64,000 nucleotides of DNA, taken from assembly GCA_907165135.1 (NCBI GenBank), contig OU015568.1:7192001-7256000 (forward strand), given 5' to 3'. This DNA is from Oikopleura dioica. Taxonomy: Eukaryota; Animalia; Chordata. This document shows positions 8,542-42,605 of this stretch, piece after piece; within the stretch, counting starts at the first letter, position 1; each line of letters begins with the position of its first letter. The translations under genes were made by a program, and so were the position numbers. The notes beneath the pieces are model-generated. The model saw only the letters and a list, made by a program, of their open reading frames with translations. It was not told the DNA's origin and ran no database searches.

Positions 8542-9471
8542 GTCAAGTAAGTCTTCTGAACCTTCCCGTATAAATACTTTTTAGATATGACCATGATGGA
8601 CAAAATACCACCATCAAATTCTTCAAAGACAGAAATGGAACCTTTGAACTGTATCTTTTTTTGAGCTGCAAATGTTTAAAACGAGCGTAAGTCAATATAA
8701 TTGTTCATCATTTGGCAGTAGCCCGTTTTCTGCATTATTATTTTATTATCTGTATTTAGCCATATTTTATTTAATAAAATTATTTATATATTTTCACAAA
8801 CAAATGTCATTTTTCATGAAATTTGGAGAAAGCTGCTTTCTCGTTTAATTTCCTGCTAATGAAAATGTTTGCATATCCGTGAATGCAATCCTTAATCAAG
8901 ATCTAATCCATCTGTGATCCCGGACATGATAACCGGGATCTAACTTCCAGGTACCGCGGTGACTTCTATCGAGGCAACAGCTGATGAAGTTGCTGTCGCG
9001 AGCGAGTTTCCACCATCAGCTGACAGTTTGTACTTCAGCTTAGATTTATGACAAAGAGAGAGAGTCATACCGTTACAATACCTTATTCTTTCTATCCAAG
9101 ATAAAACTCGTCTTCGAAGAGCTAGTGGCAAGAGATTAGCACAGAAGCTTCGAAGAACAAGTAACAACCCTGCGCCGGCTCAAGAATAGCTGTTAGGTGA
9201 GTCAGGACTGTGCGTTATGCAAGGAGGTATCAGAAATAGAAATTTCTGGTCCCGCTAAAGGTGCTAAGTGTTAACTTGCTACCCGCGTCTTAGTACATCT
9301 ATCTGCACACAATGAAGTACTCTTTTTTACAGATCGCATTGCGCTTTTTTTATCGATTTTTAGTTTCTTAGAGATTTTTTTCTACTGACTGATTAGCTTA
9401 GAGAAAGACGCTAAAAGACTGTTTTTTAGACAATACGATATCGACACTGCCCCACAACGGTAAAAAACCAA

Positions 9472-21400: not shown

Positions 21401-24400
21401 CTTCGATCAAGCTTCGAGTTCAGGACACTCCCGGCCCTCCTGTTGGTCCTCTCAACATTAGCTCTGTCTACGCTGATCGAGTCACTCTTACATGGAACCA
21501 GCCATCAAATGATGGTAACTCCTTGGTCAACAACTACATCGTTGAACGACGAGAAACTTCCAAGATCAGCTGGACTGTTATTGGCCCTGCTGTCAAGACT
21601 CTTGCTTTCCGAGCTACTGGTTTGAGCAGCGAAGCTGAGTACATCTTCCGAGTCCGAGCTGAAAACCGATTCGGTATTGGTCAGCCTCTCGAGTCTGCTG
21701 CAGTTGAGCCTAAGAACCCCTTCACTGTTCCTGGCCAATCTGGTCGACCAACCGTCTCCAACATCACAAAGTCTGGATGTATGCTCACCTGGAATGGTCC
21801 AAAGAGTGACGGTGGCCGAGAAATCAAGGGCTACCACGTCGAGAAGAAATTCCGAGAATCCACCAAATGGTTCCGAGTTACTCGAAAACTTTGCCAGACC
21901 AAGGGCTACCGAGTCCAAAATCTCATCGAAGGCCGAGAGTACGAGTTCCGAGTCATTGCTGAGAACCCTGCTGGTCTTGGTCAGGCTTCTGAAGGCTCAC
22001 AGGCTGCTTTGATCTGCGATCCTACTTACCCACCTGGAATTGTCACATTGCCCAAGGTTACCGATACCACCAAGAACAGCATCTCCATCAACTGGCAGAA
22101 GGTCAGCTACGATGGCGGCGCTCAGGTCAGTGCTTACCACGTTGAGTACTGCGAAGTTCCCGAAGATGAAGGAGCTGAAGAGGTTTGGATGCCAGCTACT
22201 CCACCAAAGGGTATTACTGAACAAGCTACTGTCATCACCGAGCTCGAATCTACCAAAAAGTACAAAATTCGAGTTTGTGCTGCAAACATCAACGGCTGCT
22301 CTGATTGGAAGGAGCTTCCAGCTTCTTGCCAGCCAACTGACCGACACAGTGCTCCTGAACTTCACCCTGACTCTGACTGGAAGAACTCCTTGATTGTCAA
22401 GGCTGGTCAGCGATTTGTCCTTTTCGCTAAGGCTAAAGGTCGACCAACTCCATACATGAGAGTTACTCGTGGAGAAGAGTCTGTTCCCGAAGGAATCAGT
22501 ATTGAAGAAAAGGATGATCGACTTACTATGTTGACTGCTGAGGCTACTCGATGGCACTCTGGAAACTACACTCTCCATCTTGAGAACCAGGTCAAATCTG
22601 TGAAGATTCCATTCCAGATTCGAGTCATGGATACTCCCGGCCCTATTCAAGATCTCAAGGTGACTGAAGTCACCAAAGACGCGATCACTCTTGCTTGGGA
22701 GAAGCCCACTAATGATGGCTCTTCTCACATCACCAACTACGTCGTTGAAAAGCGAGAGACTGATCGAAAGGCCTGGACAACTGTTACCGACAACCAAGGT
22801 CGATGCACCATCAAGATCGATACTTTTGCTGGCGTTCGATACAATTTCCGAATCTGTGCTGAAAACGATCAGGGTCGCGGTGTTATGGTCGAAACGCCCA
22901 AGGCTATCCTTGCCACTGAAGTTCCTCAGCAGCCCGAGCCAATTCACCTTCTCGATGTCACTCGAGATTCTATCACTATCCGATGGGCTCGACCTCTTTG
23001 CGACGGTGGAAGCAAAATCACTGGATATGATGTTGAAACTCGAGACAAGGATAAGTCCGCTTGGGTTAAGCGAGTTCACACTCGAGAGCTCGAAGCTCGA
23101 GTTCCAGGTCTTACTGAAAACGTCCAAGTCGCCGTTCGTGTCGTCGCTCTAAACCACGCTGGTCGATCTGCTCCACGAGAATATTACCAGATGATTTTGG
23201 TCAAGGATACCCAGGAAGCTCCTTCTGCTGATCTCCGAAACTTGGCTGGAAACACAGTCAGCATCAAGGCCGGAAACAACCTTAAACTTTCTGTTCCGAT
23301 GTCTGGCCGACCAGTTCCCAAATACACCTGGTACAAGGGACGAGATGCCACCAACATCATGAAGCCATCTCAGCGAGTTACCGTCAACCACGACGATAAC
23401 AAGATCGCTTACCTTGGAATCAACAATGTCTACCAAGAAGACGCTGATACTTACGTTCTTCATATGAAATCTGCTGCCGGTGAGACTAAGGTCAACGTTA
23501 ACATCAACGTTTTGGACGTTCCAGCCATGATCCGAGATCTCAAGACCCGAGAAGTCAGCAGCAACTACGTTGTTCTTGCTTGGACTCCACCAGCTTTCGA
23601 CGGTGGCTCTTCCATCGCCGGCTACCATGTTCACTACCGAACAACTGGCTCATCTGAATGGATCGAGTTCTCAACAACTGTTGTCCGAACTGTTCTCAAG
23701 ATTGGTGGTCTCAAGAACGGCGAAGAGTACACTTTCCGAATCAAGGCTGCCAATCGATTCGGTCCTGGTCCATCTGTTATGACCACTCCTGTGACTTGCC
23801 GACTTGGCTTCGTTGCTCCTGGCGCACCAGCTGCTCCAGAAGTTGTCAGCGTTTCCAAAGAATGCATCACAATCAAGTGGGCTTACCCAACCAAGGACGG
23901 TGGACACACTGTTGACGGTTACGACGTCGAAGTCAAGGACAAGAACTCGATCATGTGGCGAAAGCAAAACATGACTGTCATCCGAAAGCGTGAATTCCGA
24001 TGTGCTAATCTTACTGCTGCCTTGGAATATGAGTTCCGAGTTATTGCTATCAACCCTGCTGGCAAATCTCGACCATCTGCTGCTTCTGATCCAGTTGCTG
24101 CTCTTGATCCCGTTGATCCACCAGAGAAGGTTCTCGTCACTGATATCACCAAATCTACTGTCAGCCTTATGTGGGCTCCTCCACGATACGATGGTGGCGC
24201 TCGAATCATTGGTTACCTCGCTGAAAAGCAGGAAATCTCCGCTGACGGCGTTGAAGGCCGATGGACAAAGGCTTGCTTCACTCTCATTGCCGAGAACAAC
24301 TACACTATCCAGGGTCTTGAAGAGGACACTCTTTATCGATTCCGAATCATCGCTAAGAACTCCGCTGGTGTTTTCTCTGACGCTTCCATCCCATGTGAAG

Positions 24401-27400
24401 AAGTCAAGACTCAGGATCTTTACACTCCTCCTCTTCTTACTCCAGACCAGCATCTCTTCAAGGAAGTCCGCGTCGCTGCTGGCACTGAACTTCGACTTCA
24501 CATTGGCGTGAGCGGCAAGCCCGAGCCAAGCATGGACTGGGAAGTTAACGAAAAAGACATCGTTTCTGAGCCAGATCGAATTATTGAGCGAAACGCAACT
24601 GGAACTACCATTGTCATCAAGGACACTTCTCGACTTCACACTGGTCGATACCGATTCAGCGCTCGAAATGCGCTCGGTGAACGACATCACGATTTCCGAG
24701 TTCACATTATGGATCGACCCGACAAGCCAACTGGTCCAATTAAATTCTTGAAGATTTCGGCTTCCAAGATTCAGTTCCGATGGGCTGGACCAAAGAATGA
24801 CGGCGGTGCTCGACTTATGGGTTACGCTGTCTTCAAGCGAGAAACTACTCGAGTTTGCTGGACTCCACTTACTCAGTGCTCTGAGACTCTTACTTGGACT
24901 GCTGACAAGCTTCTCCCTGGAAATGAGTACCAGTTCCGAGTTCAGGCCGTGAACAAGTTTGGCGTCGGTGAAGGACTTGATTCAATTCCATGCGTTGCCG
25001 AGAACAAATTTACTGTTCCAATGAAGCCCGGCCGACCTGGCATTCAAAATGTCACTGCAACCTCGTGCTCTCTTGCTTGGGCGCGACCAGAATATGATGG
25101 AGGATCTGAAATCTCCGGCTACTGGGTTGAGAAGAAGGATTACCGATCCACTCACTGGTTCAAGTGCCACAAGCGAATCTGCCGAGATATGCGATTTGCT
25201 GTCAAGAACTTGATCAAGGGCAAACAATACGAGTTCCGAGTCCTTGCTGAAAACGCTGCCGGTTTCTCTGAGTATTCTGCTCTTTCTGAAATCATCACCG
25301 CCGTTGATGCCGTCAACCCACCAGGACCAGTCATGAACCCCAAGGTTCGAGACACTACTGCTTCTACCATCACTGTTGGCTGGAACAAGCCAAACTACGA
25401 TTCTGGATCAGAAATCACCGGATACGTTGTTGAAGCGCTCGAAGAATGCACTGACGATTGGGTTGTCATTGCCGAAACCGCCGAAACCAAGGCTAAATTC
25501 GAGGTCAAGCGAGACACTGCTTACATGATCCGAGTTTACGCTGAAAACGACGGTGGTCTCTCCAAGCCCGTTCAGCTTCCCAACATTGTTCGACCAATGG
25601 AAAAGCTTGAGAAGCCAGAATACGATCTTGACGCTGCTCTCCGAAAGACTGTCATTGTCAAGGCTGGCTCTCACGTTGGACTCAACATTCCAATCAAGGG
25701 CCGACCATTGCCCAACGTGCGATGGGAATACAATGGCGTTGACGCTAACGCTTACGATCGATGCCTCGTTGAGGTCGTTGAGGGCGAGATGAACAGCTAC
25801 ACCAAGCTCACAATCTCCGATGTTAACCGAGACGATACTGGCAAGTGGCACCTTCACCTTGAAAATGCTGCTGGCAAGGCCGCTACTTTCGTCAATCTCA
25901 AGGTTCTTGACACTCCCGGCCCCATCGGAAACCTCCAGGTCCGACGAGTCACCAAGGAGAACTGCATGATCTCTTGGGACATTCCAAAGAACGAGGGTGG
26001 CACCGAAGTCATCTCATACACTCTTGAGAAGCGAGAATCTACTCACCGAGCCTTTACTACTGTCATTGCTGACTGCCTCGACTTGAACTACAATTACAAG
26101 AATCTCCGAACTGGATCGTCTTACTACTTCCGAGTTTCTGCCAACAACGCTGAAGGTATCGGTATTTCTACTGATACTGAGCTTGTCACAATTACTGAAA
26201 CTCCCGGCGCTGTTCGAAACCTTCAGGTTGTCGACACTACCGACAGCGCAATCAAGGTCCGATGGGAGCGCCCAGAAGACGATGGCGGTACCCCAGTCAT
26301 GAGCTACAAGGTCAGCTACGCCGAGATCGTCGCTGGTAAAGAAACTTACTACGACTTTGATGTTCGACATGCTGAGGCTGAGATCAAGGATCTCGACAAG
26401 GGTCGACCATATGAAATCCTCGTCTGGGCTCGAAACGAAGCCGGTCTCGGTCTCCGAGAAAGATCGGTCCAGTTGTCTGCCAGGAACTTCTTATTCCACC
26501 AGCACTTGATCTTTCTGCTATCATTGGCCGACAGGTCAACTGCCGAGTCGGTGCTCAGATTCGACTTGACTTGCCAGTCACTGGTAAACCCAGACCAACC
26601 ATGGCGTGGACCAAGGACCGAATCCCCATCAAGCGCGATGACGGAATCAACATCGAATATGGCAAGGACCAGGTTACCCTTATGTGGGGCGAAGTAACCA
26701 AAGCACACGCTGGTCAGTACTACTGCAAGCTTGACTCAAAGGCTGGCATGGTTGAATCTTCCTTCATTTTGAACGTCTTTGGTGTTCCTGGCAAGGTTCA
26801 CGGTCCAATTGAATTCATCGACGTTGATGCTACTGAGGTTCATCTTGATTGGGAAATCCCAGAAGATACTGGTGGATCCGAAATCACTGGCTACGTCATT
26901 GAGCAGAAGATCTCTACCATGGACAAGTTCAAGATGGTTACTGCTTCTTGCTCTCGATCTCAGTTCCGAGTCAAGAAACTCGAAGAAAAGCAGGAATACG
27001 TTTTCCGAATCGCCGCCGAGAACAAGTACGGTGTTGGTCCATGGCTCGAATCCGTTCCAGTCACTCCACGATCGAAGTACCGACGACCCACTCCACCAAG
27101 CACTCCCGAGTTCTACGATGTTGCTGCTACTACCATGACTATGATCTGGAATGCACCTCAGTCTAACGGTGGAACTGAACTCCTTGGCTACTACCTTGAG
27201 AAGCGAGAACGAAACGCGATTCTCTGGACTAAGGTTAACACTCGACCAATCAAGGATCCTGAACACAAGGTCACCGGTCTTCTTGAAGGTCTTGAGTACC
27301 AGTTCCGAGTCTACGCCGAGAACAAGGTCGGCTTCTCTGCTGTCTCCGATCCATCCAAATTCCAGCGAGCCTTTGATCAGGTTTCTGAGCCTCAGGATCT

Positions 27401-30400
27401 CGAAGTTGTCGACATCAACCGAGACTCGGTCTCTCTTCGATGGAAGGAACCAAAATTCAACGGCGGTGCCAACATTACCTCCTACAACGTTGAGAAGCGA
27501 TCTGGTCTTGACAACCGATGGTACAGAGCTAACTTCGCCTCTATCACCGAGTGCGAATACACTGTTACTGCTCTTACTCCTGGAGAAGAGTACGAGTTCC
27601 GAATCACTGCTCGAAACGCTCTTGGAACCATGTCTCGACCATCTCAGCCAACTAACAAGGTTGTTCCCCACGATGAATTCATCCAGCCTCAGATTCTCTT
27701 CGATCGAGAACTTTTGGATGGTGTTTTCACTCGATCAGGCAAGACCATTGTTCTCAAGGCTCAGGTTGTTGGTAAGCCTACTCCACGAGTCTGGTGGACT
27801 AGAGACGATGCCGAGCTCATTCCTTCGCCCAACATGGATATTGAATCCGACAACAAGGGTAACCATACCTTGACCATCAAGGAAGCTCGACGACAGGACA
27901 GCGGCAAATATGAGCTCTTCGCCAAGAATCCTTGCGCTCTTCGATCTTATGATATCGATGTCCGAGTTCAGGATCGACCTGGTGCACCAAAGGGCCCCAT
28001 TAAATTCACTTCCGTCTCTGGCGAAAAGATGACTCTCTGGTGGGAAATGCCACAGGATGATGGAGGAGCAGCAGTTGAGAAGTTCCTTGTTGAACGACGT
28101 GAGACTTCTCGAACTACCTGGAACATCGTTGATGCCAATGTTAGCTGCTGCAATTTGACCGTCATTCGATTGCTCAAGAACCACGAATATCAGTTCCGAG
28201 TCTTCGGTATCAACAAGTTTGGCATTGGTACTCCACTTCACTCCGATCCAATCATCGCCCGCTACCAGTTCAACGTTCCTGGCAAATCTGGTGCTCCTAC
28301 TCGAGCTAACTCGTCTAAGGACTCAATCACCATTATGTGGGCTCGACCTCAGTCTGATGGTGGCAATGACATCAAGGGTTACCACGTTGAACGACGAGAA
28401 AAGCGATCTCTCCGATGGGTCCGATGCTCTAAAGACCTTGTTTCTGAGCTCAGATACAAAATCACCAACCTCACTGAAGGTAACTGGTATGAGTTCCGAG
28501 TTACTGCTGAAAACAACGCTGGTCCTGGTGAGTCTTCTGATGCCGGTCCATTGATCGAGTGCCGAGAGCCAGTCAACACTCCTGGCGTTCCTGGCGTTGT
28601 CCGAGTCATCGATACTACTCGAACAACCGTCGCTATTGCCTGGTCCCCACCAACTTTCGATGGCGGTTCTGCTGTTACTGGATACAATGTCTACACCAAG
28701 CAGCTCCAGCCACCATCAATTGACAAGGAGCAGCAGGCTGAGGCTGAAGAAGCAGAAGAAGAAGTTGAATTTGCCCGAATGAACATTGAAGCCGTCAAGG
28801 CTTGCAACTGGATCATTCCTGGTCTCACTCCTGGTCAGGAGTACCTTGTCCGTGTTGCTGCTGTCAACGTCGCTGGCGAAGGCCACCATGTCCAAATGAC
28901 CGGCCGCGTTACTGCTGTTGATCGACTAGAGAAGCCCGATTTCGTCATTGGCGCCGACTTCAGATCCAACTACATCGTTCGAGCTGGCAAGCCTCTTCAT
29001 GTTTCTCTCCAGTACTACGGTCGACCTCTTCCTACAGTCACTTGGTCCAAGCCTAACTGTGATCTTGAAGACCGAGCTGAGATCCGAACTACTGACTGGA
29101 ACTCTGAATTGACTATTCCATCAACTGAGCGAAACGACTCTGGAAAATACACCATCACTCTCGAATCTGGTGCTGGTATGAAGGAGCTCAACTTGAACAT
29201 CAAGATTCTCGACACCCCAGGCGCTTGCTCAGAGATTCAGGTGACCAAGGTCACTCGAGAATCCTGCTCTCTTCAGTGGCTTCCACCAACCATCGACGGC
29301 GGTGCTTTCGTCAAGTCTTATGTTGTCCAGAAGCGAGAAGTTTCTCGACGATCTTGGCAGACTGTTACTAGAAACTGCCAGCGACCTGCTTACACCGTCA
29401 GTGACCTCGAGCCAGGAAGCAACTGGTGCTTCCGAGTTCTCGCCGAAAACGAATTCGGTATTGGTGAGCCACACGAGCTTTCTCGATCTGTCATTATGAC
29501 CGAACTTCCATCTTCTCCAGACAAAGCGTCTGTTACCAACGTCACTTCCAGCTCTATCAGCATTCGATGGACTGCTCCAATGTCCAACGGAGGTTCTCGA
29601 ATCTCTTATTACCTCATCGAATCGCACAAGAAGGGTGAAAAGAAGCCTGACGGCCTTGACTTCTGGGTTGAAGTCGCCAAGGTCCGAGGATCCATCTACG
29701 AGTACACTGTCTCTGGTCTCACTAAGGGCTGCGAGTACCTTGTTCGAGTTCGAGCTATCAACGAATCTGGTGTTGGTCCAGAGCGAGACGCTTTCCCATC
29801 GGTTGTCTGTGAAGATGAAGCCATTGCTCCCGAAGCTGATCTCAAGCGACTGTACAACAAGACTCTCACAATCCGAGCTGAACAGAACGCAATCATCGAA
29901 ATTCCATTCATTGGCTCTCCTAAGCCAAAGATCACCTTCTTCAAGGGCGAGAATAAGGAGCGAAAGCTCTTCTCTGAAGGCAAATATCTTATTACTATCA
30001 CTGATAAGGTTGCTACTCTTCGAATCAGCTCTACTGAGAAGAAGGATTCTGACACTTATTACATCCGACTTGAAAATTGCAATGGAATCGTTGAGAACAA
30101 GTTCTACGTTAACATCTTCGACGTTCCTGGACCAGTTTCTGGACCAATCACTTTCACTGATGTCTCTGCTGATGGTATGACCGTCAACTGGGGACTTCCT
30201 GAAGAGAAGGGCGGTGCTGAAATCAACGGTTACTCGATTGAATACCGCGAGTACGGCCGAACTACTTGGACTCAACTTACAAGCTGCACAACCCGAAGCT
30301 ACTTCAAGGTCCGAAAGCTTGTCCGATACACTGAGTACCAGTTCCGAGTTCGAGCTGAAAACCGATTCGGCTTTGGTGACGCTATTGTTTCTGATCCATG

Positions 30401-33400
30401 CCGAGCCGAATACGCATTCGTTGCTCCTCACAACCCATCTACTCCTGAGGTCCTCCAGATCACCAAGGATTCCGTCAAGATCGAGTGGAACCAGCCGGTC
30501 AACGATGGCGGAAAGAAAATCACTGGCTACTGGGTTGAAAAGAAAGAAATCAACTCTATCGTCTGGCAGAAGGAAAACACCCAGTCTTCCATCAAGGCAA
30601 CTGAAGCTTGGTGCCACAACCTTATCGAAGGTCTTGAGTACCAGTTCCGAGTTCGAGCTGAAAACGATGCCGGTATTGGTCGACCATCTGAGCCTTCTCG
30701 CGCATGCACTGTTCGAGCTGAAGTTAGCGCTCCTAACAATCTCAGCATTGTTGACATGATGAGCAACTCTGTTATCCTTGCTTGGCAACCACCAACTATG
30801 GATGGCGGCTCAAAGATCTCCCAGTACGTTGTTGAGCGACGACATATTCCAGATGGCCGATGGCTCCGATGTAACTACAACAACATCACCACCTGCGAGT
30901 ACACCGTTTCTGGTCTTACTCCTTCTGATACTTACGTCTTCCGAGTTATTGCGAAGAACACAATGGGCACTGTTGGCCATCCAACTGAGCCAACTGAGCC
31001 TGTCAAGTGCGAAGAAAAGATGGAACCACCAACCATTCAGCTCGATGCTGCTCTTCTCACTGATTGCTTCACCGTCCGAGCTGGCAACAACGTCAGCCTC
31101 GAATGCCAAGTCCTTGGTCGACCACGACCAAAGGTCTTCTGGTACAGAAACGGCCAAGAAATCGAAGCTGGTGACCGAGCTGTTATGGAACGAGATCACA
31201 AGAACGCTACTCTCAATATCAAGGACTGCTCCAAGGAAGACACCGCCAAGTACGAGATCGTTTGCCGAAACCAGTGCGGCGAAGTCCGAGAATATGTCAA
31301 TCTCAAGTGCCTCGATCGACCAGACAAGCCAAAGGGCCCAATCAACTTCAGCCGAGTTATGGGTACCAAGTTCGTCATCAACTGGGGTCTCCCTGCCAAC
31401 GATGGTGGCTCCAAGGTCACTCACTACATCGTCGAGCGACGTGAAACTTCTCGAATCAGCTGGGTTCCTACCGATGATCACTGCGAGCTCATGACTACTA
31501 CAGTTAAGAAGCTCATCAAGGGCTCAGAGTACATTGTCCGAGTCTTTGCTGTCAACGAGTACGGCATCTCTCCACCATTGGAGTCTTCTCCAATTGTTAC
31601 CAAGGATACTTTCACTGTTCCTGGTATGCCTGGAAAGCCTGCTGTTCTCACCACGACGAAGGATTCCGTCACTATTCAGTGGACTCGACCAGAAGAAGAT
31701 GGTGGATCTGATATCTTCAACTACGCTGTCGAGCGACGAGAAAAGGGTGGACAAAAGTGGATTCGAGTGAACAAGCGAGTTCAGATTACTGAACTTCACT
31801 ATCGAGTCACTGGTCTCTCAAAGGGATCTGAGCACCAGTTCCGAATTTCCGCTGAAAACTCTGCCGGTCTTTCATACTTCTCTGATGAGTCTCAGTTCGC
31901 CAAGGTTTTGGACCCAACTTTCTCTCCAGCTGCTCCATCCAACCCACGAGTCGTCGATATGACCAAGACCTCTCTTATGTGCCGATGGAACACTCCACTT
32001 TACGATGGCGGAAGCCCGATCCTTGGCTACGTCGTTGAAGTTGCTCAGATGCCTGATAAAGAGAAGGCTATCATTGCTGAAGGCGATGACCGACTTCCTG
32101 ATGAGTCTGAGGATGAAGTCGAACTCGAATGGGACCGAACTCACATTTCCAAGTACATTGTTGGAAATTCCCATAACATCACTGGTCTTGAAGCAAATAA
32201 GGAACATCAAATCCGAGTTTTTGCTGTCAACGCTGTTGGTGTCTCCGACAAGTTTGCTCAGCTCAGCTCTCCAATCCGATGCCGAGATATCATCGAAGCG
32301 CCCGAGTTCGAAGTTGATGCTTCTATTCAGAAGAACATGCTCATCCGAGCTGGTCGACCAATCGTCCTCAAGGTTCTTGCCAAGGGCCGACCTACTCCAT
32401 TTATGATGTGGAAGAAGGAACCTGCTGGTGAGAACTTGGCCACTCGAGCTTACATCGACTGCAACGATGGAAAGGCTTACCTTGAAATCGAACGAGCTGA
32501 TCGATACGATTCTGGTCGATACACTGTCATTGCTGAGAATCCTGCTGCTACTCGTGAGTACAACATCAACGTCAAGGTCCAAGATACTCCTGGTCCAGTT
32601 GGACCACTTGTGATTAAGGATGTGAACCGAGACTCCTGCGTTATCAGCTGGGAACCTCCACAGCTTGATGGATGCTCAAAGATCCGAAACTACATCATCG
32701 AAAAGCGAGAAGCTGGCCGAAGATCCTGGCAAACTGCTATTTCTAAGTGCGAGCGACTTTATGCCCGAGTTACTGGCCTTGAAGAGGGAACTCTTTACCA
32801 GTTCCGAGTTGTTGCTGTCAACGAATTCGGCAATGGCGAAGGACGAGAATCCGAAGAAACTGTTCTTGCTGCTGAAGTGCCAACTCCACCAATGAACATC
32901 CAGGTTGTCCAAGTCACCGACGATTCCATTTCTCTCAAATGGCAAGCTCCAGAGCAATCTGGTGGATCTCGAGTCAAGGGTTACGTTGTTGAAGCCCAAG
33001 AAAAGGGAACTGAGCGACGTGAATACTCTGTCATGTGCAAGACAAAGCACTGCAAGGGACAAGTTGTCGGTCTCAACACTGGCAGCGACTACTACTTCCG
33101 AGTTCGAGCTCTTAACGACTGCGGCTTCTCTGATCCTCGAGACCTTGTCTCCTCTGTTTGCATCAAGGAACCACGAGAAGAACCATCCGTCGATCTTTCT
33201 GAATGCCCACAGAAGATTCTCCACGTTGTCCAGGGCCGACCAATTGAGATCGCTATTCCAATCTTCGGTAAACCTTTGCCAAAGATCACCTGGATGAACG
33301 AGATGGACCAGAAGATCATGGAAATCGCCGACAAGCGACTCGTGCAGAACACCAAGACTCATGCTGTTCTTGAGATCCGAGATTCTAACTATGGCGATGT

Positions 33401-36400
33401 CGGTGTTTACAAGCTTTTACTCGAAAACGAGTCTGGAACTTGCACTACCAAGCTTCAGCTTCTTGTTCTTGCTCCACCAACTGAGCCAACTGACCTTGTT
33501 GTTTCCGATGTTGAAGCCACTTCTTGCGTCCTCACTTGGCAACTGCCCGCTTACGATGGTGGCGCTGCCCTTAGCAACTATGTTGTCGAGCGACGAGAAG
33601 TTCACCGGCCAATTTGGGGACTTGTTTCTGGCACTCAGACCCGAAATACCATCAAGGTCAACAACTTGACTGAAAACACTGAATACATGTTCCGAGTTTG
33701 CGCTCAGAACAGATTCGGCGTTGGCAAGGGTGTCATGTCGGAGGAAGTTCTTATCAAATCTCGATTCCAGCTACCTGGTCCACCATCTACTCCAGAAGTT
33801 TTGTCTGTCAACAAGGACTCCATCACTCTTACCTGGAACCAGCCCATCAATGACGGTGGAACTGACATCATCGGTTACATTGTTGAACGAAAGCAAGCTC
33901 AGGGACAGCGATGGATCCGAGCTACTCCTCAGATGATCCAGGCCACCAAGTTTGTCTCCACCAACTTGATCGAAGGTATGGAATACTTCCACCGAGTCCG
34001 AGCCGTCAACAGCAAGGGCGAATCTAAGCCTGGTAAGCAGACCGATGCTATCAAGTGCCAGGATCCAATCAGCCCACCTGGACCTTGCCTCGACTTCTCT
34101 GTCACTGACATGACCTCCACTTCTTGCAGCTTTGCCTGGGTTGAACCATCCTTCCACGGCGGTGCCAAGGTCACTGGATACTTCATCGAATTCCGAACTG
34201 GTGATGATTGGTGGCGAAAGGTCAACAGCCGACCTATTCGAATCTGCGAATATGTTTGCATGAACTTGCCAGAAGGTGATGAGTTCCGTGCTCGAATCGT
34301 TCCAGTCAACGCTGGCGGTGAAGGTGAACCTCTTGAGATTGAAGTTCCAATCAAGATCATGGATCTTACTGGTCCACCAATCATTCTCAACCACGACCAC
34401 TTCGACGAGACCTATGTCACCAAGAAGGGCGGTATGATCTCCCTCTGCGTCTGGTTCAAGTCTAAGCCTCTTCCTAACATTCAATGGAGCAAGGAAGGAT
34501 GCAAGGATATTGAGAAGCGAGCTATGATTGCTAAGCACAGCGATCATACTGAACTCGTTATCCGAGACGTTGAACGACTTGCTGACAGTGGCACTTACAA
34601 GTGTACTCTTTCCAACAACTACGGCGAAGACGATGTTGTCATCCCAGTCAATGTTATTGGCCGACCCGATGCTCCTGAAGGTCCACTCCAGTTTGGTGAC
34701 AAGACTCAGAACTCTGTCAAGCTTATCTGGAAGCCAACTCTCAACGATGGAGGAAGCCCAATCAGCAACTACGTCATCGAATACAGATGCATTGGTCGAC
34801 AGCGAACTATCACTTGTGATAAGAAGCTCCGATCAACCAGCCACACCGTCACTGGTCTCCAAGAAGGAGTTGAATATTCCTTCAAGGTCTACGCCGAGAA
34901 CTTTTTCGGACTTTCTCTTCCTCTTGAATCTGAAGACCCAGTTATTCCAAAGAATCCTCTCTTCCCACCAACTGAGCCTCATCATATTGAAATTAATGAG
35001 GTTACTCGACACTCTATTGGTCTTAGCTGGGCTAAGTCAATGGACGACGGTGGAAGCCGAATCCTTGGTTATCACGTTGAGCGACGAGAAGCTGGATCCG
35101 ATCACTGGTTCAGATGCAACAAGGTGCACACTCCAAACCTCAACTTTGTCGTCAGCGGTTTGGTTGAGAATGCCAGCTACCAGTTCAGAATCTGCGCTGT
35201 CAACGCCGTCGGCGAGTCTGACGTTTCTGAGCCAACCGAAGAGATCTGCTGCAAGCTTCCATTCGAAGTTCCTTCTTCTCCTGAAGAGATTGAAGTCCAG
35301 CACCGAACTAAGGACTCCATCACTATCGCCTTCAACAAGCCCGAAAGTGATGGTGGCAAGCCAATTGAAGGATACACTGTTGAGTACCGAATGTATGGCT
35401 ACCACACCTGGAAACAGACTTGCGAAGAGCCTCAGCCCGACAAGATCGTCCAAGTTGGCGGTCTTGATGAAGGTACTGACTACGAATTCCGAGTCTGCGC
35501 TGTCAACTCTGTCGGCAAATCTCGACCAAAGATCATGGAGGGTATTGCCTCGACTAAGAAGGCTGTTGGTGATCCTCCAGAAGTCCTTGAAGCAATGGCT
35601 GACCAGGCTGTTGTCTTTGGCAACGATGCTGTCTTCGAGTGCAAGATTTCCGCAAAGCCTGCTGCTGACATTGAATGGTACAAGTTCAATGAAAAGCTTG
35701 CTTCCGGCAAGAAGTACAAGTTCGATACTGATGGCGAGAAACAGATTATGATCGTCAAGAACGCCCAGTACGAGGATGAAGGAAACTTCTACTGCGCCGC
35801 TCGAAACCAGTTTGGCCGAGAAGAAATCTGCGCCAAACTTTCTGTCGAGTCTGAGCCAAAGATCGATCCTACCTACAAGTTCCGAGAGAACGTTCAGTTC
35901 CGACAGGGTACATCAATCAACATTACTCTTCCATATGTTGGTCGACCTGAACCTCAGGTTCTCTGGATGCGAAATGGTGAGCGATTCAACTTCAAGAACA
36001 TGGCTGTTGAGTCCACTGACAAGTACACTTACTTGTTGATCCCCGACTGTGATCGACAGGCTCATCAGGGACGATACACTGTTGAGCTCAGCAACAAGCA
36101 CGGCAAGAACAAATACGCTGTCAATGTTGAAATCCAGAAGGGCCCAACTGCACCCAAGAAGCTCGAATTTGTTTCTTCCAATTACACCACTATCAAGGTT
36201 GGTTGGGAAGCTCCCGCTGACAATGGTGGAAGCGCCATTACCAACTACATCCTTGAGAAGAAGGACATCACTGCCGCTAAGGCCGAAGCTGAAGCTAAGA
36301 AACCTGAACCAGTTGCGGCTCCAGAGCCAGTTGAAGGCGAAGAAGCTGCTGAGCCAGTCGAACCAGCCAAGCCAGCTGAACCACAGGGAGTCTGGCAGCT

Positions 36401-39400
36401 TGTCACTTCCTCCACTCTCAACACTGAGTACATTGTTGAAGGTCTTACTGAAGGACACGCTTACCGATTCCGAGTTTGTGCTCGCAACTTGATTGGTGTT
36501 TCTGGTTACACTGAGATTGAAGAACCAGTCATTGCTTCTCCACCATTCAATAAGCCTGATCCACCAACTTCTGTCGTCTGCAGCAATGCCAAGGGCGAAG
36601 TTGCCATGATCAGCTGGAAGGCGCCCAAGAACGATGGCGGTAACAAGGTCAAATACTACCACATTGAGCGACGAGAACGACGACGAGGACAGTGGGTCCG
36701 ATGCTCCAACGAAACTGACTTCATCAAATACACAACTCACAAGGTCAGCGGCCTCGTTGAAGGACAGTTCTACGAATTCCGAGTTTTGGCTGAAAACGAA
36801 GCTGGCTTCTCTAAACCTTCTGAGCCATCTCAGCCAGTCAAGGTCGACTCTGCCGTTACTCCAATGGCACCAAAGATCGTCGAGCCTCTCCGTGACTACG
36901 TTGCCAAGCCTGGTCAGAACTTGACCATCCAGACTAAGATTTCTGGTACTCCAAAGCCAATCATCAAGTGGTACAGAAGTGGCAAGGAAATCACTCCTTC
37001 TTACAAGTACGACATTCGAGAAGGACGAGGCAACTACTTCAGCTTGACTATCATGGACTGTGATAACGACGACGAGACTGAATACTCTGTCCGAGGTGTT
37101 AACCCACACGGCGCTGTTCACATGCACGCCAAGGTTTCTGTCCAGGTTCCTGCCAAGCTCAAGGTCCCACGACACATGATGTACGAAGCTACTCGATGTC
37201 GACGACACGAAGTTGTGCAGATCAAGATCCCTGTCGAAGGCTTCCCTCTTCCAGACATCACATGGTCTATCCAGGGCAACCTCATCTTCAACGACACTCG
37301 ACACAACATCCACACTACTCCTTCTTTCACCACTTTGACCATCAACGATGCTGATCGAAAGGACTCTGGATTCTACGTTGTCCAGGCCAAGAACCGATTC
37401 GCCAACGACTCCGTTTCCGTCGAACTCCTTGTTGTCGATGTTCCTCAGCCACCAACTAACATGAAGGTTTCTGAGATCACTCGAGATTCTTGCTACCTCA
37501 GCTGGGACGAACCACGAGACAATGGCGGCCTTATGCTTCAGAAATACTCGATCGAGATGTGCCCTGCTTCTTCCAACAGATGGACTCAGGTCTCTTCTAC
37601 TCGAGCTCAGCATTACACCGTCATCAACCTTTCTGGCCGAACTCGATACACCTTCCGAGTTATTGCTCTCAACGAAATTGGCGCTTCCAAGCCTTCTGAG
37701 CAGTCTGAGACGATCACAACTAAAGAAGACCGAATCATCGCCAGCAACTACGACGACTGGGTTGATCCTCTCGACAAGTTCAAGCCATACGTTGCCAGCA
37801 TCACTTCTGATAGCATCCATGATAGCTTCCACATTTGCGAAGAGATCGGCCGAGGTACTTTCGGTGTCTGCCACCGAGCCAAGGAGATTCTCACCGATAA
37901 GGCTTTCGTCGCTAAGTTCATGAAGGTCGATGGTGCTGACCGAGTTCACGTCCGACGTGAAATTGATATCATGCGAAAACTTCAGCATCCCAAGATCCTC
38001 CAGCTTCACCAAGTCTGCGACATGCGAAACGAAATCGTCATGCTTACCGAGTTCCTTTCTGGACCAAACCTCTTCGAGAAGCTTTCTGATACTCGATTCG
38101 ATCTCAACGAACAGAAGTGCATTGGTATCGTCAAACAGATGTGCGAAGCATTGGCCTTCATCCACTCTCTCAAGATCGCTTACCTCGACTTGAAGCCAAC
38201 TAATGTTATCTTCTGCACTCGAAAGGTCAACCAGCTCAAATTGATGGACTTTGGTCAGTCTCGAATCTGCCAGCCAGGCGAGACCGTTCGACTTGCTTAC
38301 AAGACCCCCGACTTTGTCGCCCCTGAAGTTGTCACCAACGAAACTGTCCACTTTGGAACTGATATCTGGTCCCTTGGTGCTATTGTTTACTTCATGGTTT
38401 CTGGCAAGCTTCCATTCGGCGGTGAAAACGGTGAAGTTGTTCGAAACAACGTCATTGAAGGTTCTTTCGACTTGAACTGCAACGAGTTCACTCAGATCAC
38501 CGATGACTGCCTCGACTTCATCGACCGATGTCTTCAGCGAGACCGAAAGGCTCGAATGACCGCAGTCGATGCTATTCAGCATCCATTCTTGCAGCCACTT
38601 CACCGCGAGTTGAGCCGAGATCTTATCATCCAGCGACAGAAGCCAATCAACACCATTCCTCATCGAGCTGTTTACGGTGCTACGCGAAAGGGTGACGAGA
38701 CCGAGTCTCTTATCGGCATTGCTCGATGGGCAAATGGAGGTGCTCTCAAGTCACACCGAGGCCACACCATTTCCAAGGTCCGAATCGCACCATGGGAAAT
38801 GTCTCCAAAACTCAGAGCTATGCACCATGTCATGGCCAAGGAAGGTTCCACTCCCAAGCTTATCTGCCGAATCGAAAACGCAACTGGCAACGAGAAGATC
38901 ACCTGGTACCACAACAACATCGCCCTCGATACTGGCTTCACCGTCGACGATGAAGGCAACGAGATCAAGAACAACGACAAGTACGAGGCGGAATTCTCTG
39001 CTGCTAAGGGTGCTTCTCTTTACATTATCGGCGTCAAGGAGCGAGATGAGGGAACGTACAAGGTCCGTGTTGAGAACGGCTTTGGTGCTACCTTCAATCA
39101 GCTTGAAGTCTGCGTTGAGCGACGATCTGACCGCACTTGGACTCGAACTCGTCGATCCTTGTACATGAAGCACAAGAAGAGCAAGGGACTCGGTGGCCGA
39201 GAAGTCAAGGCTCTCCGACGACCCCCAGAGTTCACTCTTCCTCTCTACAACAGGACGATTACCGAGGGAGAAAATGTCACTTTCTCTGTCACTTGCACCG
39301 TCCACCCCGATCCAGCCATTACTTGGTTCAAGGATGGCCAGAAACTCAGCTTCGGCGAGGATGATACTCAATACGATTGCACTTCTGATAAGGGTCTCTA

Positions 39401-42400
39401 CTCGATGACTCTCAAGCGATGCGATGCCGACTTTACTGGCGAGTACAGCGTTCAAGCTGTCAATCCATATGGCGAAGATTGGTCTAAGGCTACTTTGACC
39501 GTCAAACCTAAGGCTGCCAAGGCAGACATCACCGTCCGACCTATGTTCCGACGACTTCTTTCCAACATGGAAGTCGAAGAGAACCAATCTGCTCGATTCG
39601 ACGTTCGAGTCACTGGATTCCCTCGACCAACTCTTGTCTGGGAGAAGGACGGCAAGGAAATCACTCCTACTCAACACCACCAGATCGTCTGGGAAAGCAA
39701 CCACGACTGCTACCTCATCTGCTACAACACCTTCAGCGATGATACCGGTCTCTACAAGGTCACTGCTACCAACTCTGCTGGTACCTCTTCTTGCCAGGCT
39801 CAGCTCACTGTCAAGCCTATCAAATACGAGCGAAAAAAGGCTCCACGAGAGAACGCTGACCTCATTGCTGAGTCCAAGCGAGCTAAACTTGCTCGACTCA
39901 TTGCTGGCGATGCTACTCCAGTTCCAATGAACGAACGAGCTAAGCTTGCTCTTGCTGATGCTGAGGCTGCCGCCCGATCTTTGAAGATGGAAGGTGTCGA
40001 TGAGGAAGTTGATCCACTTGAAGATGTCAAACTCCAGAAGGTCCGAGCTCCACCAATGAAGATGCCATACAAGATTCCAGAATCTCGAGAAGTCGATCCT
40101 ACTGTCGCTCGAATTGACAAGAACATCACTCAGTACGAGCCACTTTCTGACATGAAATGGTACAGATCTTCTAAGAAGGCTAACGAGCTCATCGATCCCG
40201 CTCTCCAGGGCACCAAGGTCGAGCCACGACGACAGAAACACATCAAGCAAGTTCTTCTGCCCGACACTGAGGGACTTGTTCCCGTCAAGCGAGTCAAGGC
40301 TGACTTGAACACATCTTCTGATCGATACCGAACTCTTGAGACTATTCTTGGCGACTCTGATAGCAAGGCCATCAAGGATGCTAAGATTGATCCAAACCAG
40401 ACTTACATCACCTACTACCGACCAGAACTTGATGACGAGCTCGTTCTCAAGCCATGCGACGAGTACATGAACGAAGTCAGAGCCAAGGAGATCCTCCACG
40501 ACGAAGAAGTTGAGCGAGAAGAACTCCGACGCAAGAAGTTCAAGAACCGATCTCAGATCCGAAAGGAACTCTACGGCGAAGATGATGAAGAGTTTGAGCT
40601 CAAATCTGTCAAGGTTCCTAAGAAACAGATGGATATGGGAACTCCTCTCTCTGAACTCGAAGCACGACGAAAGGTTCTTATTCCAGATCGAGCTGAGCGA
40701 AAGAAGATTCACATTGGATCTGATTCTGAGGATGAAGCCCTCGCTAACATCAAATCTGGCTCCTGGAAATACGCTGGAATGCGAGAACAGATGGAATTCG
40801 ACGCTAAGAAGGGTCGCGGCCGAGCTCAACCTGCTGAAGTCGCCCCTCGACCAAGATACGTTCCAACTGCTGATGCTGATGAAGCTTATCTCGAGACTCT
40901 TCGACCCCCAGCAAGAAAGACCCGAGCTGCTGAATACTTGATCAACAAGAAACCTCTTGGTCAAGCGGATTTCGAGACTCACGAGCTTCTCCAGCCACAG
41001 CGACGACTTTACCAGGATTATGAAGATTCTGATGAAGAAGAAGCTAGACCAGTTCGACGACGACGCCGACGAGACTCTGGCTCCTCCATCTTCACTGCTC
41101 CTGGCCGACATGGTCACTTCGAAGAAGACGTTGGAGAAGAAACCCTCGAATTCACATCTTCAAAGTACAAGAAGCAAGCAAAATCATCCGCCGCTTCCTC
41201 TTTTGATGTTCCCACAATCGAGACTGCTCCTACTTTCCAAATCCGATTGAAGAGCCACGTCGTTCCCGCTGGATCTAAGACCAAATTCATGTGCTCCGTT
41301 GTTGGCAAGCCCCGACCTCAGATCACCTGGTCTCACAACGGAACTACTCTCACCAACGGTGGCAAGTACCAGATCGAAGATCTCGCCGGTGTTCTCACCC
41401 TCACCATCCACAACTGCAATGCTGATGATGCCGGAACTTACCAAGCCCGAGCTTTCAACACTGCTGGCGAGTCTTCTGACTACGCCACCCTTGAGATCGG
41501 AGAATACGGATCTACCAAGAGCCAGCGAGGATTGAGCGATGGCACCAAAATGAGCTCGATGAAGATGGACGAATGGTCAATGCGAGAGCCTTACCGAAAG
41601 TCCACTCAGGCCGTCGCCGGTGCTCGAAAACTCCCTGGTGAGCCATATTTCCTCTCTGCTCCACGAGACCAGACTGTTGCTGATGGAGAGACTGCTCGAT
41701 TCACCGCCAACGTTGATGGCAGCCCAATGCCAAGAACAATGTGGCAGCGAATGGGCGCCAATCTTCGAGATTCTGACAAGTTCAACATCCGATCTATCAG
41801 AAACCAGCAAGTCCTTGAGATCCGAAATGCTTCGGTCATCGATGCCGGAGAATACGCCGTCACCATCCAATCCCTCAAGGGAGAAGAAACCGCCTACTTC
41901 CAGTTGAACGTCCAAGGCCGAGCCCGATCCCGAGCTGCTGTTGCTTCCCCAACTCCTTCTACTGGTTCCCGAACTAGCCGATCGAGCCGAAAAGGCAAGC
42001 CAATGGTCATCTCCGAACTGCACGGACAGATTCAGCTGAACGGCTCCGTCAAACTCGACTGCTCTGTCATGGATGAACACGCTGTCAAGTCTGTTGTCTG
42101 GTACAAGAACGACCGGCAACTTTCTTCTGCAAACGCTACCGCCTCTGCTGGACAGTACACTTACACCATCGATGGAGTCACTGCTGCTGATGCTGGACAC
42201 TACGCCTGCCACTTGGTTGGACTTTCCGGATCTACTACAACTTCCTATGAGCTTCTCGAGGACCGAATCGCCGACTACGCCGCCAACGCTGCCAAGGTCC
42301 AGCGAGTTACCTCCCCCGTGAAGATTGCCAACGAAGTCACTTTGGAATCCCTCCCTGCTCAGCTCGAAGTCGCCGCTGATACCGTTCTCAGTCTTTCTAC

Positions 42401-42605
42401 CACTTTCACTGGCTCTCCCGGTAAAATCGAATGGACCCGAAACGGACAGCCTCTTGCCGATGGAGACGAAGGTGGACGAGTTACTGTAGAAACCACTCTT
42501 TCTTCTACCACCCTTACTGTCTTGGCCGTCTCTACTGATGACGCTGGACGATACAGACTTACTGTCGGTGATGAAGGATCCACCGCTGTCGTAAGCATTG
42601 TTTAA
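9472..42605 (+). CDS. TTN: Titin (A-band C-zone, P-zone, kinase, M-band), ~11,000 aa; 5' end uncertain; one -1 frameshift near 26455-26461
   Basis: Exons ~9472(9601)-9642, 9687-10553 and 10597-42605, with GT-AG introns of 44 and 43 nt. Contains 7 full Ig-Fn-Fn-Ig-Fn-Fn-Fn-Ig-Fn-Fn-Fn super-repeats, a P-zone Ig-Ig-Fn-Fn-Ig-Ig-Fn, a titin-type kinase, an M-is2-like PLSDMKWY motif and a terminal M10-like Ig. Confidence 0.97.
37825..38592 (+). other. Titin kinase domain
   Basis: IGRGTFGV glycine loop, FVAK, YLDLKPTN catalytic loop, LMDFGQ, TPDFVAPE, TDIWSLG and HPFL. Confidence 0.95.

What the first reader, a model, noticed from the sequence alone, without database searches (positions are those of the whole stretch)
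37825..38592. Titin kinase carries the active-kinase residues that vertebrate titin pseudokinase lacks
Seen in sequence: FVAK (37905-37916), YLDLKPTN (38181-38204), DFG (38247-38255) and TPDFVAPE (38304-38327). Established: vertebrate titin kinase has M instead of V in the theta-x-K motif and EFG instead of DFG, plus an autoinhibitory Tyr in the P+1 loop (PEYYAPE), and has been described as an inactive pseudokinase. All three positions are canonical here (V, D, and Val in place of the Tyr), in a protein with full vertebrate-type P-zone/M-band context. Inference: a catalytically competent chordate titin kinase, implying that the pseudokinase state arose on the vertebrate line.
Basis: partly seen in the sequence, partly recalled or inferred. 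Interest (0 to 1): 0.7.

Follow-up and report, generated by a model that had tools for sequence, protein, structure and literature searches.

The report
Active-type titin kinase in a larvacean
A planktonic tunicate's titin gene carries a kinase domain that is the true counterpart of the vertebrate titin pseudokinase but keeps the residues of a working enzyme. This places the loss of those residues on the vertebrate stem, although whether the tunicate kinase is active has not been tested.

Summary
All four motifs lie at the stated coordinates in one open frame, inside a kinase whose best solved relative is human titin kinase (E 6e-79, flanking tails included).

The gene is a real titin. It has seven 11-domain C-zone-type super-repeats, then Ig-Ig-Fn3-Fn3-Ig-Ig-Fn3, the kinase, and seven Ig domains with inserts. 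On a tree, tunicate kinases are sister to vertebrate titin kinases (98/96).

- **DFG, the catalytic-loop Lys and a large residue at CRD position -2** are all of the active twitchin type.
- **Val in VAK is not canonical.** Ala is. Val is a published non-inactivating variant: ceTwcK A34V stays active.
- **The P+1 Tyr is mainly mammalian**, so it does not discriminate.
- **Timing.** Two other appendicularian sequences share VAK/DFG/DLKPTN. Ciona-type ascidians and hemichordates have AxK/DFG. Hagfish already has LAK/EFG/DIRPEN. The pseudokinase signature therefore arose on the vertebrate stem.

The general split between active invertebrate kinases and vertebrate pseudokinases was proposed in 2014. 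I found no paper treating tunicate titin kinases. Catalysis is untested.

Verdict: a new member of a known kind, of moderate interest.

The parts
10564..42605 (+). Titin (connectin) gene body, seen as two giant ORFs (10564..26697 and 26571..42605) separated by one frame break near 26452-26456. Order of parts: [Ig]-Fn3-Fn3-Ig-Fn3-Fn3-Fn3, then seven 11-domain super-repeats (Ig-Fn3-Fn3-Ig-Fn3-Fn3-Fn3-Ig-Fn3-Fn3-Fn3), a P-zone-type block, the kinase, seven Ig domains, and the stop codon at 42603-42605.
   Evidence: ORF list; domain map from HMMs built on the window's own Ig and Fn3 domains; Pfam I-set, fn3 and Pkinase matches; orthologue P0274 reads straight through the frame break.
35586..37715 (+). 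P-zone-type block Ig-Ig-Fn3-Fn3-Ig-Ig-Fn3 directly before the kinase. Domains: Ig 35586-35783, Ig 35868-36056, Fn3 36171-36530 (carries an insert), Fn3 36579-36839, Ig 36870-37043, Ig 37197-37364, Fn3 37467-37715.
   Evidence: Pfam finds 3 fn3 and 11 I-set stretches in 35700-42602.
37740..37829 (+). N-terminal linker (NL) carrying the NYD anchor motif at 37746-37754.
   Evidence: Aligns to the NL of human 6YGN (AMNYDEEVD against ASNYDDWVD). The YD motif is described in PMC12862963. Model pLDDT is 89-95 here.
37830..38591 (+). Protein kinase catalytic domain. Motifs: Gly loop GRGTFG 37848-37865; VAK 37908-37916 (Val57, Lys59); alphaC Glu74 37959-37961; catalytic loop YLDLKPTN 38181-38204 (Asp150, Lys152, Asn155); DFG 38247-38255; P+1/APE TPDFVAPE 38304-38327; DIWSLG 38361-38378; Arg272 within RKARMT 38544-38561.
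   Evidence: Pfam PF00069 at E 5.5e-59; PDB alignment; motif coordinates. All of these residues are invariant in four tunicate sequences.
38601..38780 (+). C-terminal regulatory domain (CRD, the autoinhibitory tail). Helix R1 carries PHRAVY (38658-38675). The R2 segment IGIARWANGGALK (38712-38750) has Ile327 at position -2, Arg329 and Lys337, giving R-7x-K.
   Evidence: Aligns to the human TK CRD. The AlphaFold2 model has helices at 306-318 and 326-332 with block-mean pLDDT 81-96. Fold matches to autoinhibited TK and TwcK cover 318-351 columns at TM 0.84-0.91.
38805..42605 (+). M-band-type tail of seven Ig domains: 38805-38996, 39231-39410, 39540-39743, 41235-41414, 41658-41837, 42024-42185, 42369-42521. 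They are separated by inserts of about 79, 498, 82, 63 and 62 residues. The protein ends at the stop codon 42603-42605.

Best explanation
This is the kinase domain of the titin gene of a larvacean tunicate. Other agents of this scan name the genome Oikopleura dioica. The domain is the orthologue of the vertebrate titin pseudokinase and sits in the same place: after an Ig-Ig-Fn3-Fn3-Ig-Ig-Fn3 block and before the M-band Ig domains.

Shown here: it keeps the twitchin/titin autoinhibited build, with an N-terminal linker carrying the YD anchor and a C-terminal tail whose R2 segment is predicted to plug the ATP site. It also keeps every invariant catalytic residue of an active Ser/Thr kinase: GxGxxG, the beta3 Lys, the alphaC Glu, D-x-K-x-x-N, DFG, APE, and the alphaF Asp and Arg.

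The one deviation is Val instead of Ala two residues before the beta3 Lys. That variant leaves twitchin kinase active in published assays.

Inferred: the domain works like twitchin kinase. It would be a phosphotransferase kept off by its tails and switched on when the tails are displaced, probably by mechanical strain at the M-band.

Also inferred: the vertebrate signature (bulky residue at AxK, EFG, Arg in the catalytic loop, small residue at CRD -2) arose after the tunicate-vertebrate split and before the hagfish-gnathostome split.
For: **Identity and build**
- The best solved relatives are human titin kinase structures, at E 6e-79, with the tails included.
- The AlphaFold2 model has mean pLDDT 91.9 and pTM 0.91. 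It superposes on medaka and human TK and on C. elegans and Aplysia twitchin kinase at TM 0.84-0.91 and rmsd about 2 A over 318-351 columns.

**Orthology**
- Tunicate kinases form one clade (99/95) that is sister to vertebrate TK (100/100). Together they have 98/96 support, apart from the twitchin/hemichordate and MLCK groups.
- The gene has 11-domain super-repeats, a P-zone-type block and an M-band-type tail.

**Active-type residues**
- The motifs are listed with coordinates.
- All catalytic residues are invariant in the query, a 68%-identical appendicularian sequence and two Ciona-type sequences. They are also present in a 79%-identical sequence from a metatranscriptome.
- ceTwcK A34V retains catalysis, whereas A34M and D147E abolish it (PMC4042850).
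- Val also occurs at this position in flatworm twitchin-like kinases that are otherwise canonical.
- CRD position -2 is Ile here, as in active TwcK, TTN-1 and projectin. It is small in 452 vertebrate TKs (PMC12862963).

**Timing**
- Hagfish titin has LAK, HFDIRPEN, EFG and Ala at -2.

**The gene is under constraint and probably expressed**
- 35 of the 40 differences listed between the window and a DNA run fall on third codon positions.
- Marine metatranscriptome contigs cover parts of the kinase at 95-99% identity.
Against: - No activity measurement exists for any tunicate titin kinase. Residue patterns predict activity imperfectly.
- Human TK E147D was still inactive in vitro (PMC4042850), so DFG alone does not guarantee catalysis.
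- The appendicularian sequences have unusual features of unknown effect: Thr in place of Glu in KPEN (DLKPTN), Lys instead of the second Arg of R-7x-R, and a degenerate R1 motif (PHRAVY against [RK]H[RK]RYY).
- Val57 and Ile327 together are bulkier than the Ala+Leu/Ile pair of the active kinases.
- The AU test does not formally reject placing tunicates with the twitchin/hemichordate group (p 0.067). Orthology therefore rests on the tree together with the domain architecture.
- The gene has an unexplained frame break near 26.45 kb.
- RNA evidence consists of short metatranscriptome contigs only. A single-cell RNA run gave no reads, with only about 4% of it read.
Confidence: 0.62

Rival explanations
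1. The domain is a scaffold like vertebrate titin kinase, with negligible phosphotransfer in vivo. On this view the catalytic residues persist because they also stabilise the fold and the docked tails.
For: - The tails and their anchors (NYD, and the first Arg of R-7x-R in the query) are conserved, and the predicted state is fully autoinhibited.
- Human TK E147D stayed inactive.
- The Val57 and Ile327 pair could crowd the adenine pocket.
- The R1 motif and KPEN are altered.
Against: - Titin-like kinases inferred or reported to be inactive show decay or substitution at catalytic positions. Amphioxus has Lys to Thr, Asp to His and Asn to Ser. The tunicate-clade sequence P0053 has lost the catalytic-loop Lys. 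Vertebrates have Glu, Met and Arg.
- Here every catalytic residue is invariant across appendicularians and ascidians.
- A34V is experimentally non-inactivating.
Confidence: 0.3
2. The gene is not titin's orthologue. It would be a twitchin/projectin-type protein, so its active-type kinase would say nothing about titin's history.
For: - The AU test does not reject a tunicate plus twitchin/hemichordate grouping at the 0.05 level (p 0.067).
- The catalytic-loop form YLDLKP is shared with hemichordate 'twitchin-like' proteins.
- Twitchin also has Ig-Ig-Fn3-kinase-Ig around its kinase (3UTO title).
Against: - The maximum-likelihood tree puts tunicates with vertebrate TK at 98/96.
- The best domain scores are to vertebrate TKs.
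- The CRD segment GGAL(K/R)S is the vertebrate form, not the twitchin form.
- 11-domain super-repeats and an M-band-like tail with a roughly 500-residue insert after the third Ig are titin features (that they are titin features is my own knowledge).
- The closest named relative is annotated Titin in Ciona savignyi.
Confidence: 0.04
3. The locus is a decaying pseudogene, so the kinase motifs are relics.
For: One frame break between the two giant ORFs near 26452-26456.
Against: - About 32 kb of otherwise uninterrupted reading frame.
- Differences from another DNA sample fall overwhelmingly on third codon positions.
- Metatranscriptome contigs cover the region.
- The break sits in an A-run that is one base short relative to the reading of orthologue P0274. 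That is typical of an assembly error.
Confidence: 0.03

Closest known systems
Vertebrate titin kinase (human 1TKI/4JNW/6YGN; medaka TKb 9QJ2)
   Same: It is the orthologue by tree and by position in the protein. It has the same NL-kinase-CRD autoinhibited fold (TM 0.84-0.91), the same NYD anchor, the same first Arg of R-7x-R, and a GGAL(K/R)S-type CRD segment. It is non-RD (no Arg in the HRD motif), like TK.
   Different: DFG instead of E[F/L]G. Val instead of Met/Leu/Ile/Phe before the beta3 Lys. Lys instead of Arg in the catalytic loop. Ile instead of a small residue at CRD -2. The second Arg of R-7x-R is Lys. The [RK]H[RK]RYY motif is reduced to PHRAVY. There is no P+1 Tyr.
Twitchin kinase (C. 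elegans 3UTO/1KOA, Aplysia 1KOB), TTN-1 and projectin kinases
   Same: Active-type catalytic residues. A large hydrophobic residue at CRD -2. Autoinhibition by both tails. According to PMC4042850, molluscan TwcK also has Val at the AxK position. This is the proposed working model for the larvacean kinase.
   Different: These kinases are not orthologues: they form a separate clade. Their CRD sequence differs (YSSLRK type). Their host proteins lack the 11-domain super-repeats and the titin-type M-band tail.
Ascidian titin kinase (Ciona savignyi Titin H2YFD6; UniParc UPI00005260F1 and UPI00005260F3)
   Same: Same tunicate clade, 44-48% identical. DFG, catalytic-loop Lys, R-7x-R, and Leu at CRD -2.
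   Different: Ascidians have the fully canonical Ala (AAK/AVK) and HLDIKPEN. Appendicularians have VAK, Y(L/F)DLKPTN and Ile/Val at -2.
Amphioxus titin-like kinase (Branchiostoma lanceolatum XP_066263902)
   Same: A chordate giant muscle protein kinase with DFG, the NYD anchor and R-7x-R. Grouping it with the tunicate plus vertebrate clade is not rejected (p 0.48).
   Different: Its catalytic site is degenerate: beta3 Lys to Thr, catalytic Asp to His, Asn to Ser. The Asp to His change was already noted for B. floridae by Gautel 2011 (PMC3114093).

Membership tests
Titin kinase as defined by the vertebrate 'molecular identifiers' (PMC12862963) | theta-x-K motif in strand beta3, with theta a bulky hydrophobic residue (Met, Leu, Ile or Phe in all 452 sequences) | tested here: not met
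   The query has VAK. Val was not among the residues reported for the 452 TKs.
Titin kinase as defined by the vertebrate 'molecular identifiers' (PMC12862963) | E[F/L]G in place of DFG (20 of 452 TKa sequences have DFG) | tested here: not met
   DFG at 38247-38255.
Titin kinase as defined by the vertebrate 'molecular identifiers' (PMC12862963) | Small residue at position -2 of the R-7x-R motif in CRD helix R2 | tested here: not met
   Ile327 (IGIAR) aligns with human SAAR.
Titin kinase as defined by the vertebrate 'molecular identifiers' (PMC12862963) | R-7x-R motif and [R/K]H[R/K]RYY motif in the CRD | tested here: inconclusive
   The query has R-7x-K and PHRAVY. The His, the first Arg and the last Tyr are kept; the rest are not.
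Titin kinase as defined by the vertebrate 'molecular identifiers' (PMC12862963) | [N/L]YD anchor motif in the N-terminal linker | tested here: met
   NYD at 37746-37754.
Titin kinase by descent (orthologue of vertebrate TK) | Kinase-domain phylogeny places it with vertebrate TK | tested here: met
   The tunicate clade is sister to vertebrate TK at 98/96. The AU test of the alternative gives p 0.067, so that alternative is disfavoured but not excluded.
Titin/connectin (host protein) | 11-domain A-band super-repeats, Ig-Ig-Fn3-Fn3-Ig-Ig-Fn3 before the kinase, and an M-band Ig tail with unique inserts | tested here: met
   Seven super-repeats, the P-zone pattern, and seven Ig domains with inserts. 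The copy numbers are lower than the vertebrate 11 and 10, which I cite from my own knowledge. The Z-disc and I-band parts were not examined.
Active titin-like kinases (twitchin / TTN-1 / projectin type) | Complete catalytic residue set: GxGxxG, beta3 Lys, alphaC Glu, D-x-K-x-x-N, DFG, APE | tested here: met
   The AxK Ala is replaced by Val, which is non-inactivating in ceTwcK.
Active titin-like kinases (twitchin / TTN-1 / projectin type) | Large hydrophobic residue (Leu or Ile) at CRD position -2 | tested here: met
   Ile327 in the query, Val in the two other appendicularian sequences, Leu in the ascidians.
Active titin-like kinases (twitchin / TTN-1 / projectin type) | Demonstrated phosphotransfer once the tails are removed | not testable with these tools
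   Needs recombinant protein and kinase assays.

The most novel reading that the evidence does not exclude
Tunicate titin kinases are working, tail-gated Ser/Thr kinases at the M-band. On this reading the titin of the last common ancestor of tunicates and vertebrates was an enzyme, and vertebrates converted it into a scaffold on their stem lineage. The appendicularian pair of Val at AxK and Ile/Val at CRD -2 would then be a natural intermediate on the volume-compensation axis (Ala+Leu, then Val+Ile/Val, then Met+Ala) that ends in the vertebrate pseudokinase.
Probability: 0.5. Interest if true: 0.6.

Novelty: new member of a known kind. Interest (0 to 1): 0.42.

Why it matters
Whether titin kinase transfers phosphate at all has been disputed for more than twenty years. 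No validated substrate exists, and attempts to restore the canonical residues in human TK mostly gave insoluble protein (PMC4042850).

A natural titin orthologue that still has the active-type site, in the sister group of vertebrates, offers three things. It is a tractable protein for asking what a titin kinase phosphorylates. It serves as a reference for which of the four vertebrate substitutions matter. It also dates the switch from enzyme to scaffold to the interval after the tunicate split and before the hagfish-gnathostome split.

The significance is limited. The broad split between active invertebrate kinases and the vertebrate pseudokinase is already published, and Ciona sequences showing the same residues have been in databases for years.

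Tried and rejected
I used 37740-38780 in the ORF frame instead.
- The 50%-representative library held no close relative: the best hit was 43% identical and multi-kinase proteins dominated the ranking. Tunicate relatives came only from the word-indexed search run with the whole ORF and a region restriction and from a profile search.
- I considered the twitchin-type reading and rejected it on the tree and the domain architecture.
- I considered the pseudogene reading because of the frame break near 26.45 kb.
- The single-cell RNA run X24 gave no reads on the stretch, with only 4% of the run read. That is uninformative.
- Literature searches for tunicate, Ciona, Oikopleura or amphioxus titin kinase found no treatment of tunicate kinase motifs.
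- Hanashima 2012 (Ciona connectin) is not held, and I did not try to fetch Ohtsuka 2011 (amphioxus connectin). I cannot exclude a remark in either.
Full report
**Observation.** In the frame of the giant ORF 26571..42605 (+), the window encodes FVAK (37905-37916), AYLDLKPTN (38178-38204), DFG (38247-38255) and TPDFVAPE (38304-38327). The Pfam protein-kinase match spans 37830-38591 at E 5.5e-59. The 347 residues from 37740 to 38780 match human titin kinase structures 6YGN, 4JNW and 1TKI at E 6e-79 to 2e-77, and medaka TKb (9QJ2) at 5e-72. The match runs from the N-terminal linker through the C-terminal regulatory tail without interruption. Twitchin kinases follow at about 1e-64. The printed alignment confirms the vertebrate comparison: human YMAKF, HFDIRPEN, IIEFGQA and PEYYAPE against query FVAKF, YLDLKPTN, LMDFGQS and PDFVAPE.

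**What the gene is.** I built HMMs from the window's own Fn3 and Ig domains and mapped both giant ORFs. The order is:
- a seven-domain unit, [Ig]-Fn3-Fn3-Ig-Fn3-Fn3-Fn3;
- seven copies of the 11-domain unit Ig-Fn3-Fn3-Ig-Fn3-Fn3-Fn3-Ig-Fn3-Fn3-Fn3;
- Ig-Ig-Fn3-Fn3-Ig-Ig-Fn3 (35586-37715);
- the kinase;
- seven Ig domains separated by inserts of about 79, 498, 82, 63 and 62 residues, ending at the stop codon 42603-42605.

This is the vertebrate C-zone/P-zone/kinase/M-band layout with fewer copies. Vertebrates have 11 super-repeats and 10 M-band Ig domains (own knowledge). The two ORFs are one gene. The frame changes near 26452-26456, where an A-run is one base short compared with the reading of orthologue P0274, which runs straight through. 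I take this for an assembly error but did not test it.

**The organism.** Other agents of this scan name the genome Oikopleura dioica. This fits my data. The stretch is held by marine metagenomes and metatranscriptomes, and the nearest proteins are unnamed marine sequences at 79% and 68% identity, followed by Ciona-type titins at 44-48%.

**Orthology.** I made a maximum-likelihood tree of 41 kinase domains (LG+C20+F+G4). The query groups with the two appendicularian-like sequences (100/99). These group with a long-branch marine sequence and the ascidians in a tunicate clade (99/95). That clade is sister to vertebrate titin kinases (100/100), with 98/96 support for the joint clade. The twitchin/projectin, hemichordate and amphioxus group and the MLCK group lie outside it.

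An AU test disfavours but does not formally reject tunicates grouping with twitchin and hemichordates (delta lnL 8.2, p 0.067). Amphioxus joining the tunicate plus vertebrate clade is not rejected (p 0.48). Taken with the titin-specific architecture and the vertebrate-like CRD segment GGAL(K/R)S, I regard orthology as secure.

**Fold.** An AlphaFold2 model built on a 37-sequence alignment has mean pLDDT 91.9 and pTM 0.91, with confident tails. It superposes on autoinhibited medaka and human TK and on C. elegans and Aplysia twitchin kinase at TM 0.84-0.91 and rmsd about 2 A, over 318-351 columns. The NL-kinase-CRD autoinhibited build is therefore predicted to be conserved.

**Active or pseudokinase signature.** Two papers set the criteria.

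Bogomolovas et al. 2014 (PMC4042850) reported the following:
- Met34 (in YMAK) and Glu147 (in EFG) are sufficient to inactivate: ceTwcK A34M and D147E lose activity.
- Arg129 replaces a normally conserved catalytic-loop Lys.
- ceTwcK A34V stays active. Val occurs in active molluscan twitchin kinases and in about 5% of active human kinases.

Dorendorf et al. 2026 (PMC12862963) analysed 452 fish and mammalian TKs and defined these identifiers:
- theta-x-K, with theta Met, Leu, Ile or Phe;
- E[F/L]G;
- a small residue at CRD -2 that covaries with theta;
- R-7x-R;
- [RK]H[RK]RYY;
- the NL YD motif.

They also showed that the P+1 Tyr is essentially mammalian.

Against these criteria the query has Val57 (neither canonical Ala nor bulky theta), DFG, Lys152, Ile327 at -2, R-7x-K, PHRAVY and NYD. 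All other invariant catalytic residues are present: GRGTFG, Glu74, Asp150, Asn155, APE, Asp208 and Arg272. Two details need correcting: Ala is the canonical residue, not Val, and the missing Tyr carries little weight.

**Comparative picture.**

| Lineage | beta3 motif | Catalytic loop | DFG position | CRD -2 | Other |
|---|---|---|---|---|---|
| Appendicularian-type (query, P0250 79%, P0159 68%) | VAK | Y(L/F)DLKPTN | DFG | Ile/Val | |
| Ascidian (Ciona savignyi titin H2YFD6, two old UniParc entries, a Logan fragment) | AAK/AVK | HLDIKPEN | DFG | Leu | |
| Hemichordate 'twitchin-like' (Ptychodera, Saccoglossus) | AAK | YLDLKPEN | DFG | Ile | |
| Hagfish titin | LAK | HFDIRPEN | EFG | Ala | RHRRYY |
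| Ray-finned fishes | M/L-AK | HFDI(R/K)PEN | E[L/M]G | small | peafowl: LAK, EFG |
| Amphioxus titin-like | AAT | HLHLRPES | DFG | Ile | degenerate site |

The Asp to His change in the amphioxus kinase was already noted by Gautel 2011 (PMC3114093).

The coordinated vertebrate signature therefore appeared after the tunicate split and before the hagfish-gnathostome split. Amphioxus degenerated independently. The branch leading to vertebrate TK is long (0.69).

**Constraint and expression.** Of the 40 differences listed between the window and a DNA run of the same species label, 35 are at third codon positions, and two in the kinase that I checked by hand (37889, 37892) are synonymous. Two marine metatranscriptomes hold short contigs on the stretch at 95-99% identity or better; those at 37893-38164 and 38377-38635 lie within the kinase. 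The 79% relative itself comes from a metatranscriptome catalogue. This is suggestive evidence of expression, not proof.

**Mechanism proposed.** The domain would be a Ser/Thr kinase held off by its own tails. The NL is anchored by NYD. CRD helix R2 sits in the ATP pocket, with Ile327 predicted to pack on Val57 and Arg329 bridging to the hinge. Displacing the tails would release it, as is argued for twitchin kinase.
- *Shown:* residues, predicted fold, orthology and conservation.
- *Inferred:* catalysis, gating by force, and substrates.
- *Unknown effect:* the Thr in DLKPTN, conserved in all three appendicularian sequences, lies at a position that contacts substrate in PKA (own knowledge) and may shift specificity.

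**Novelty.** The 2014 paper already proposed that invertebrate titin-like kinases are enzymes and vertebrate TK is a pseudokinase. The 2026 paper calls TK a vertebrate-specific pseudokinase but sampled no tunicate, amphioxus or cyclostome. Searches of the held library found nothing on tunicate titin kinase motifs. One subscription paper on Ciona connectin could not be read, and one on amphioxus connectin (Ohtsuka 2011) I did not try to fetch.

The finding is a new, unstudied member of a known kind. Its value is phylogenetic: it is a true titin orthologue in the vertebrate sister group.

Noticed in passing
window 26440-26470: There is a frame break inside the titin gene. ORF 10564..26697 and ORF 26571..42605 are one gene, and an A-run is one base short relative to the reading of orthologue P0274 (...GLREKIGP...). 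This is probably a homopolymer assembly error.
   Followed up: partly
window 10564-35550: The A-band part holds only seven 11-domain C-zone-type super-repeats, preceded by a single 7-domain unit. Vertebrates have eleven C-zone and six D-zone repeats (own knowledge). This would predict a shorter titin ruler for the thick filament in this animal. It ties in with the scan's 'headless titin' note at 8900-9960.
   Followed up: partly
P0053 (marine metatranscriptome protein, 359 aa): This long-branch member of the tunicate titin-kinase clade (93/88 with appendicularians) has lost the catalytic-loop Lys (DLCPQN) and the first Arg of R-7x-R. It may be an independently degenerating tunicate titin-like kinase.
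   Followed up: no
P0135 (Branchiostoma lanceolatum titin-like, residues ~5083-5431): The amphioxus titin-like kinase lacks the beta3 Lys (AAT), the catalytic Asp (HLHLRPES) and the Mg-binding Asn, while keeping DFG, NYD and R-7x-R. It is a pseudokinase reached by a different route from vertebrates. The Asp to His change was noted for B. floridae by Gautel 2011.
   Followed up: partly
window 36171-36530: The first Fn3 of the P-zone-type block carries an Ala/Glu/Pro/Lys-rich insert of roughly 40 residues (AEAEAKKPEPVAAPEP...), resembling a short PEVK-like stretch inside a domain.
   Followed up: no
window 39744-41234: An insert of about 498 residues, highly charged, lies between the third and fourth post-kinase Ig domains. 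This is the same position as the long is2 insertion of vertebrate M-band titin (own knowledge). I did not check whether it holds phosphorylation-type repeats.
   Followed up: no
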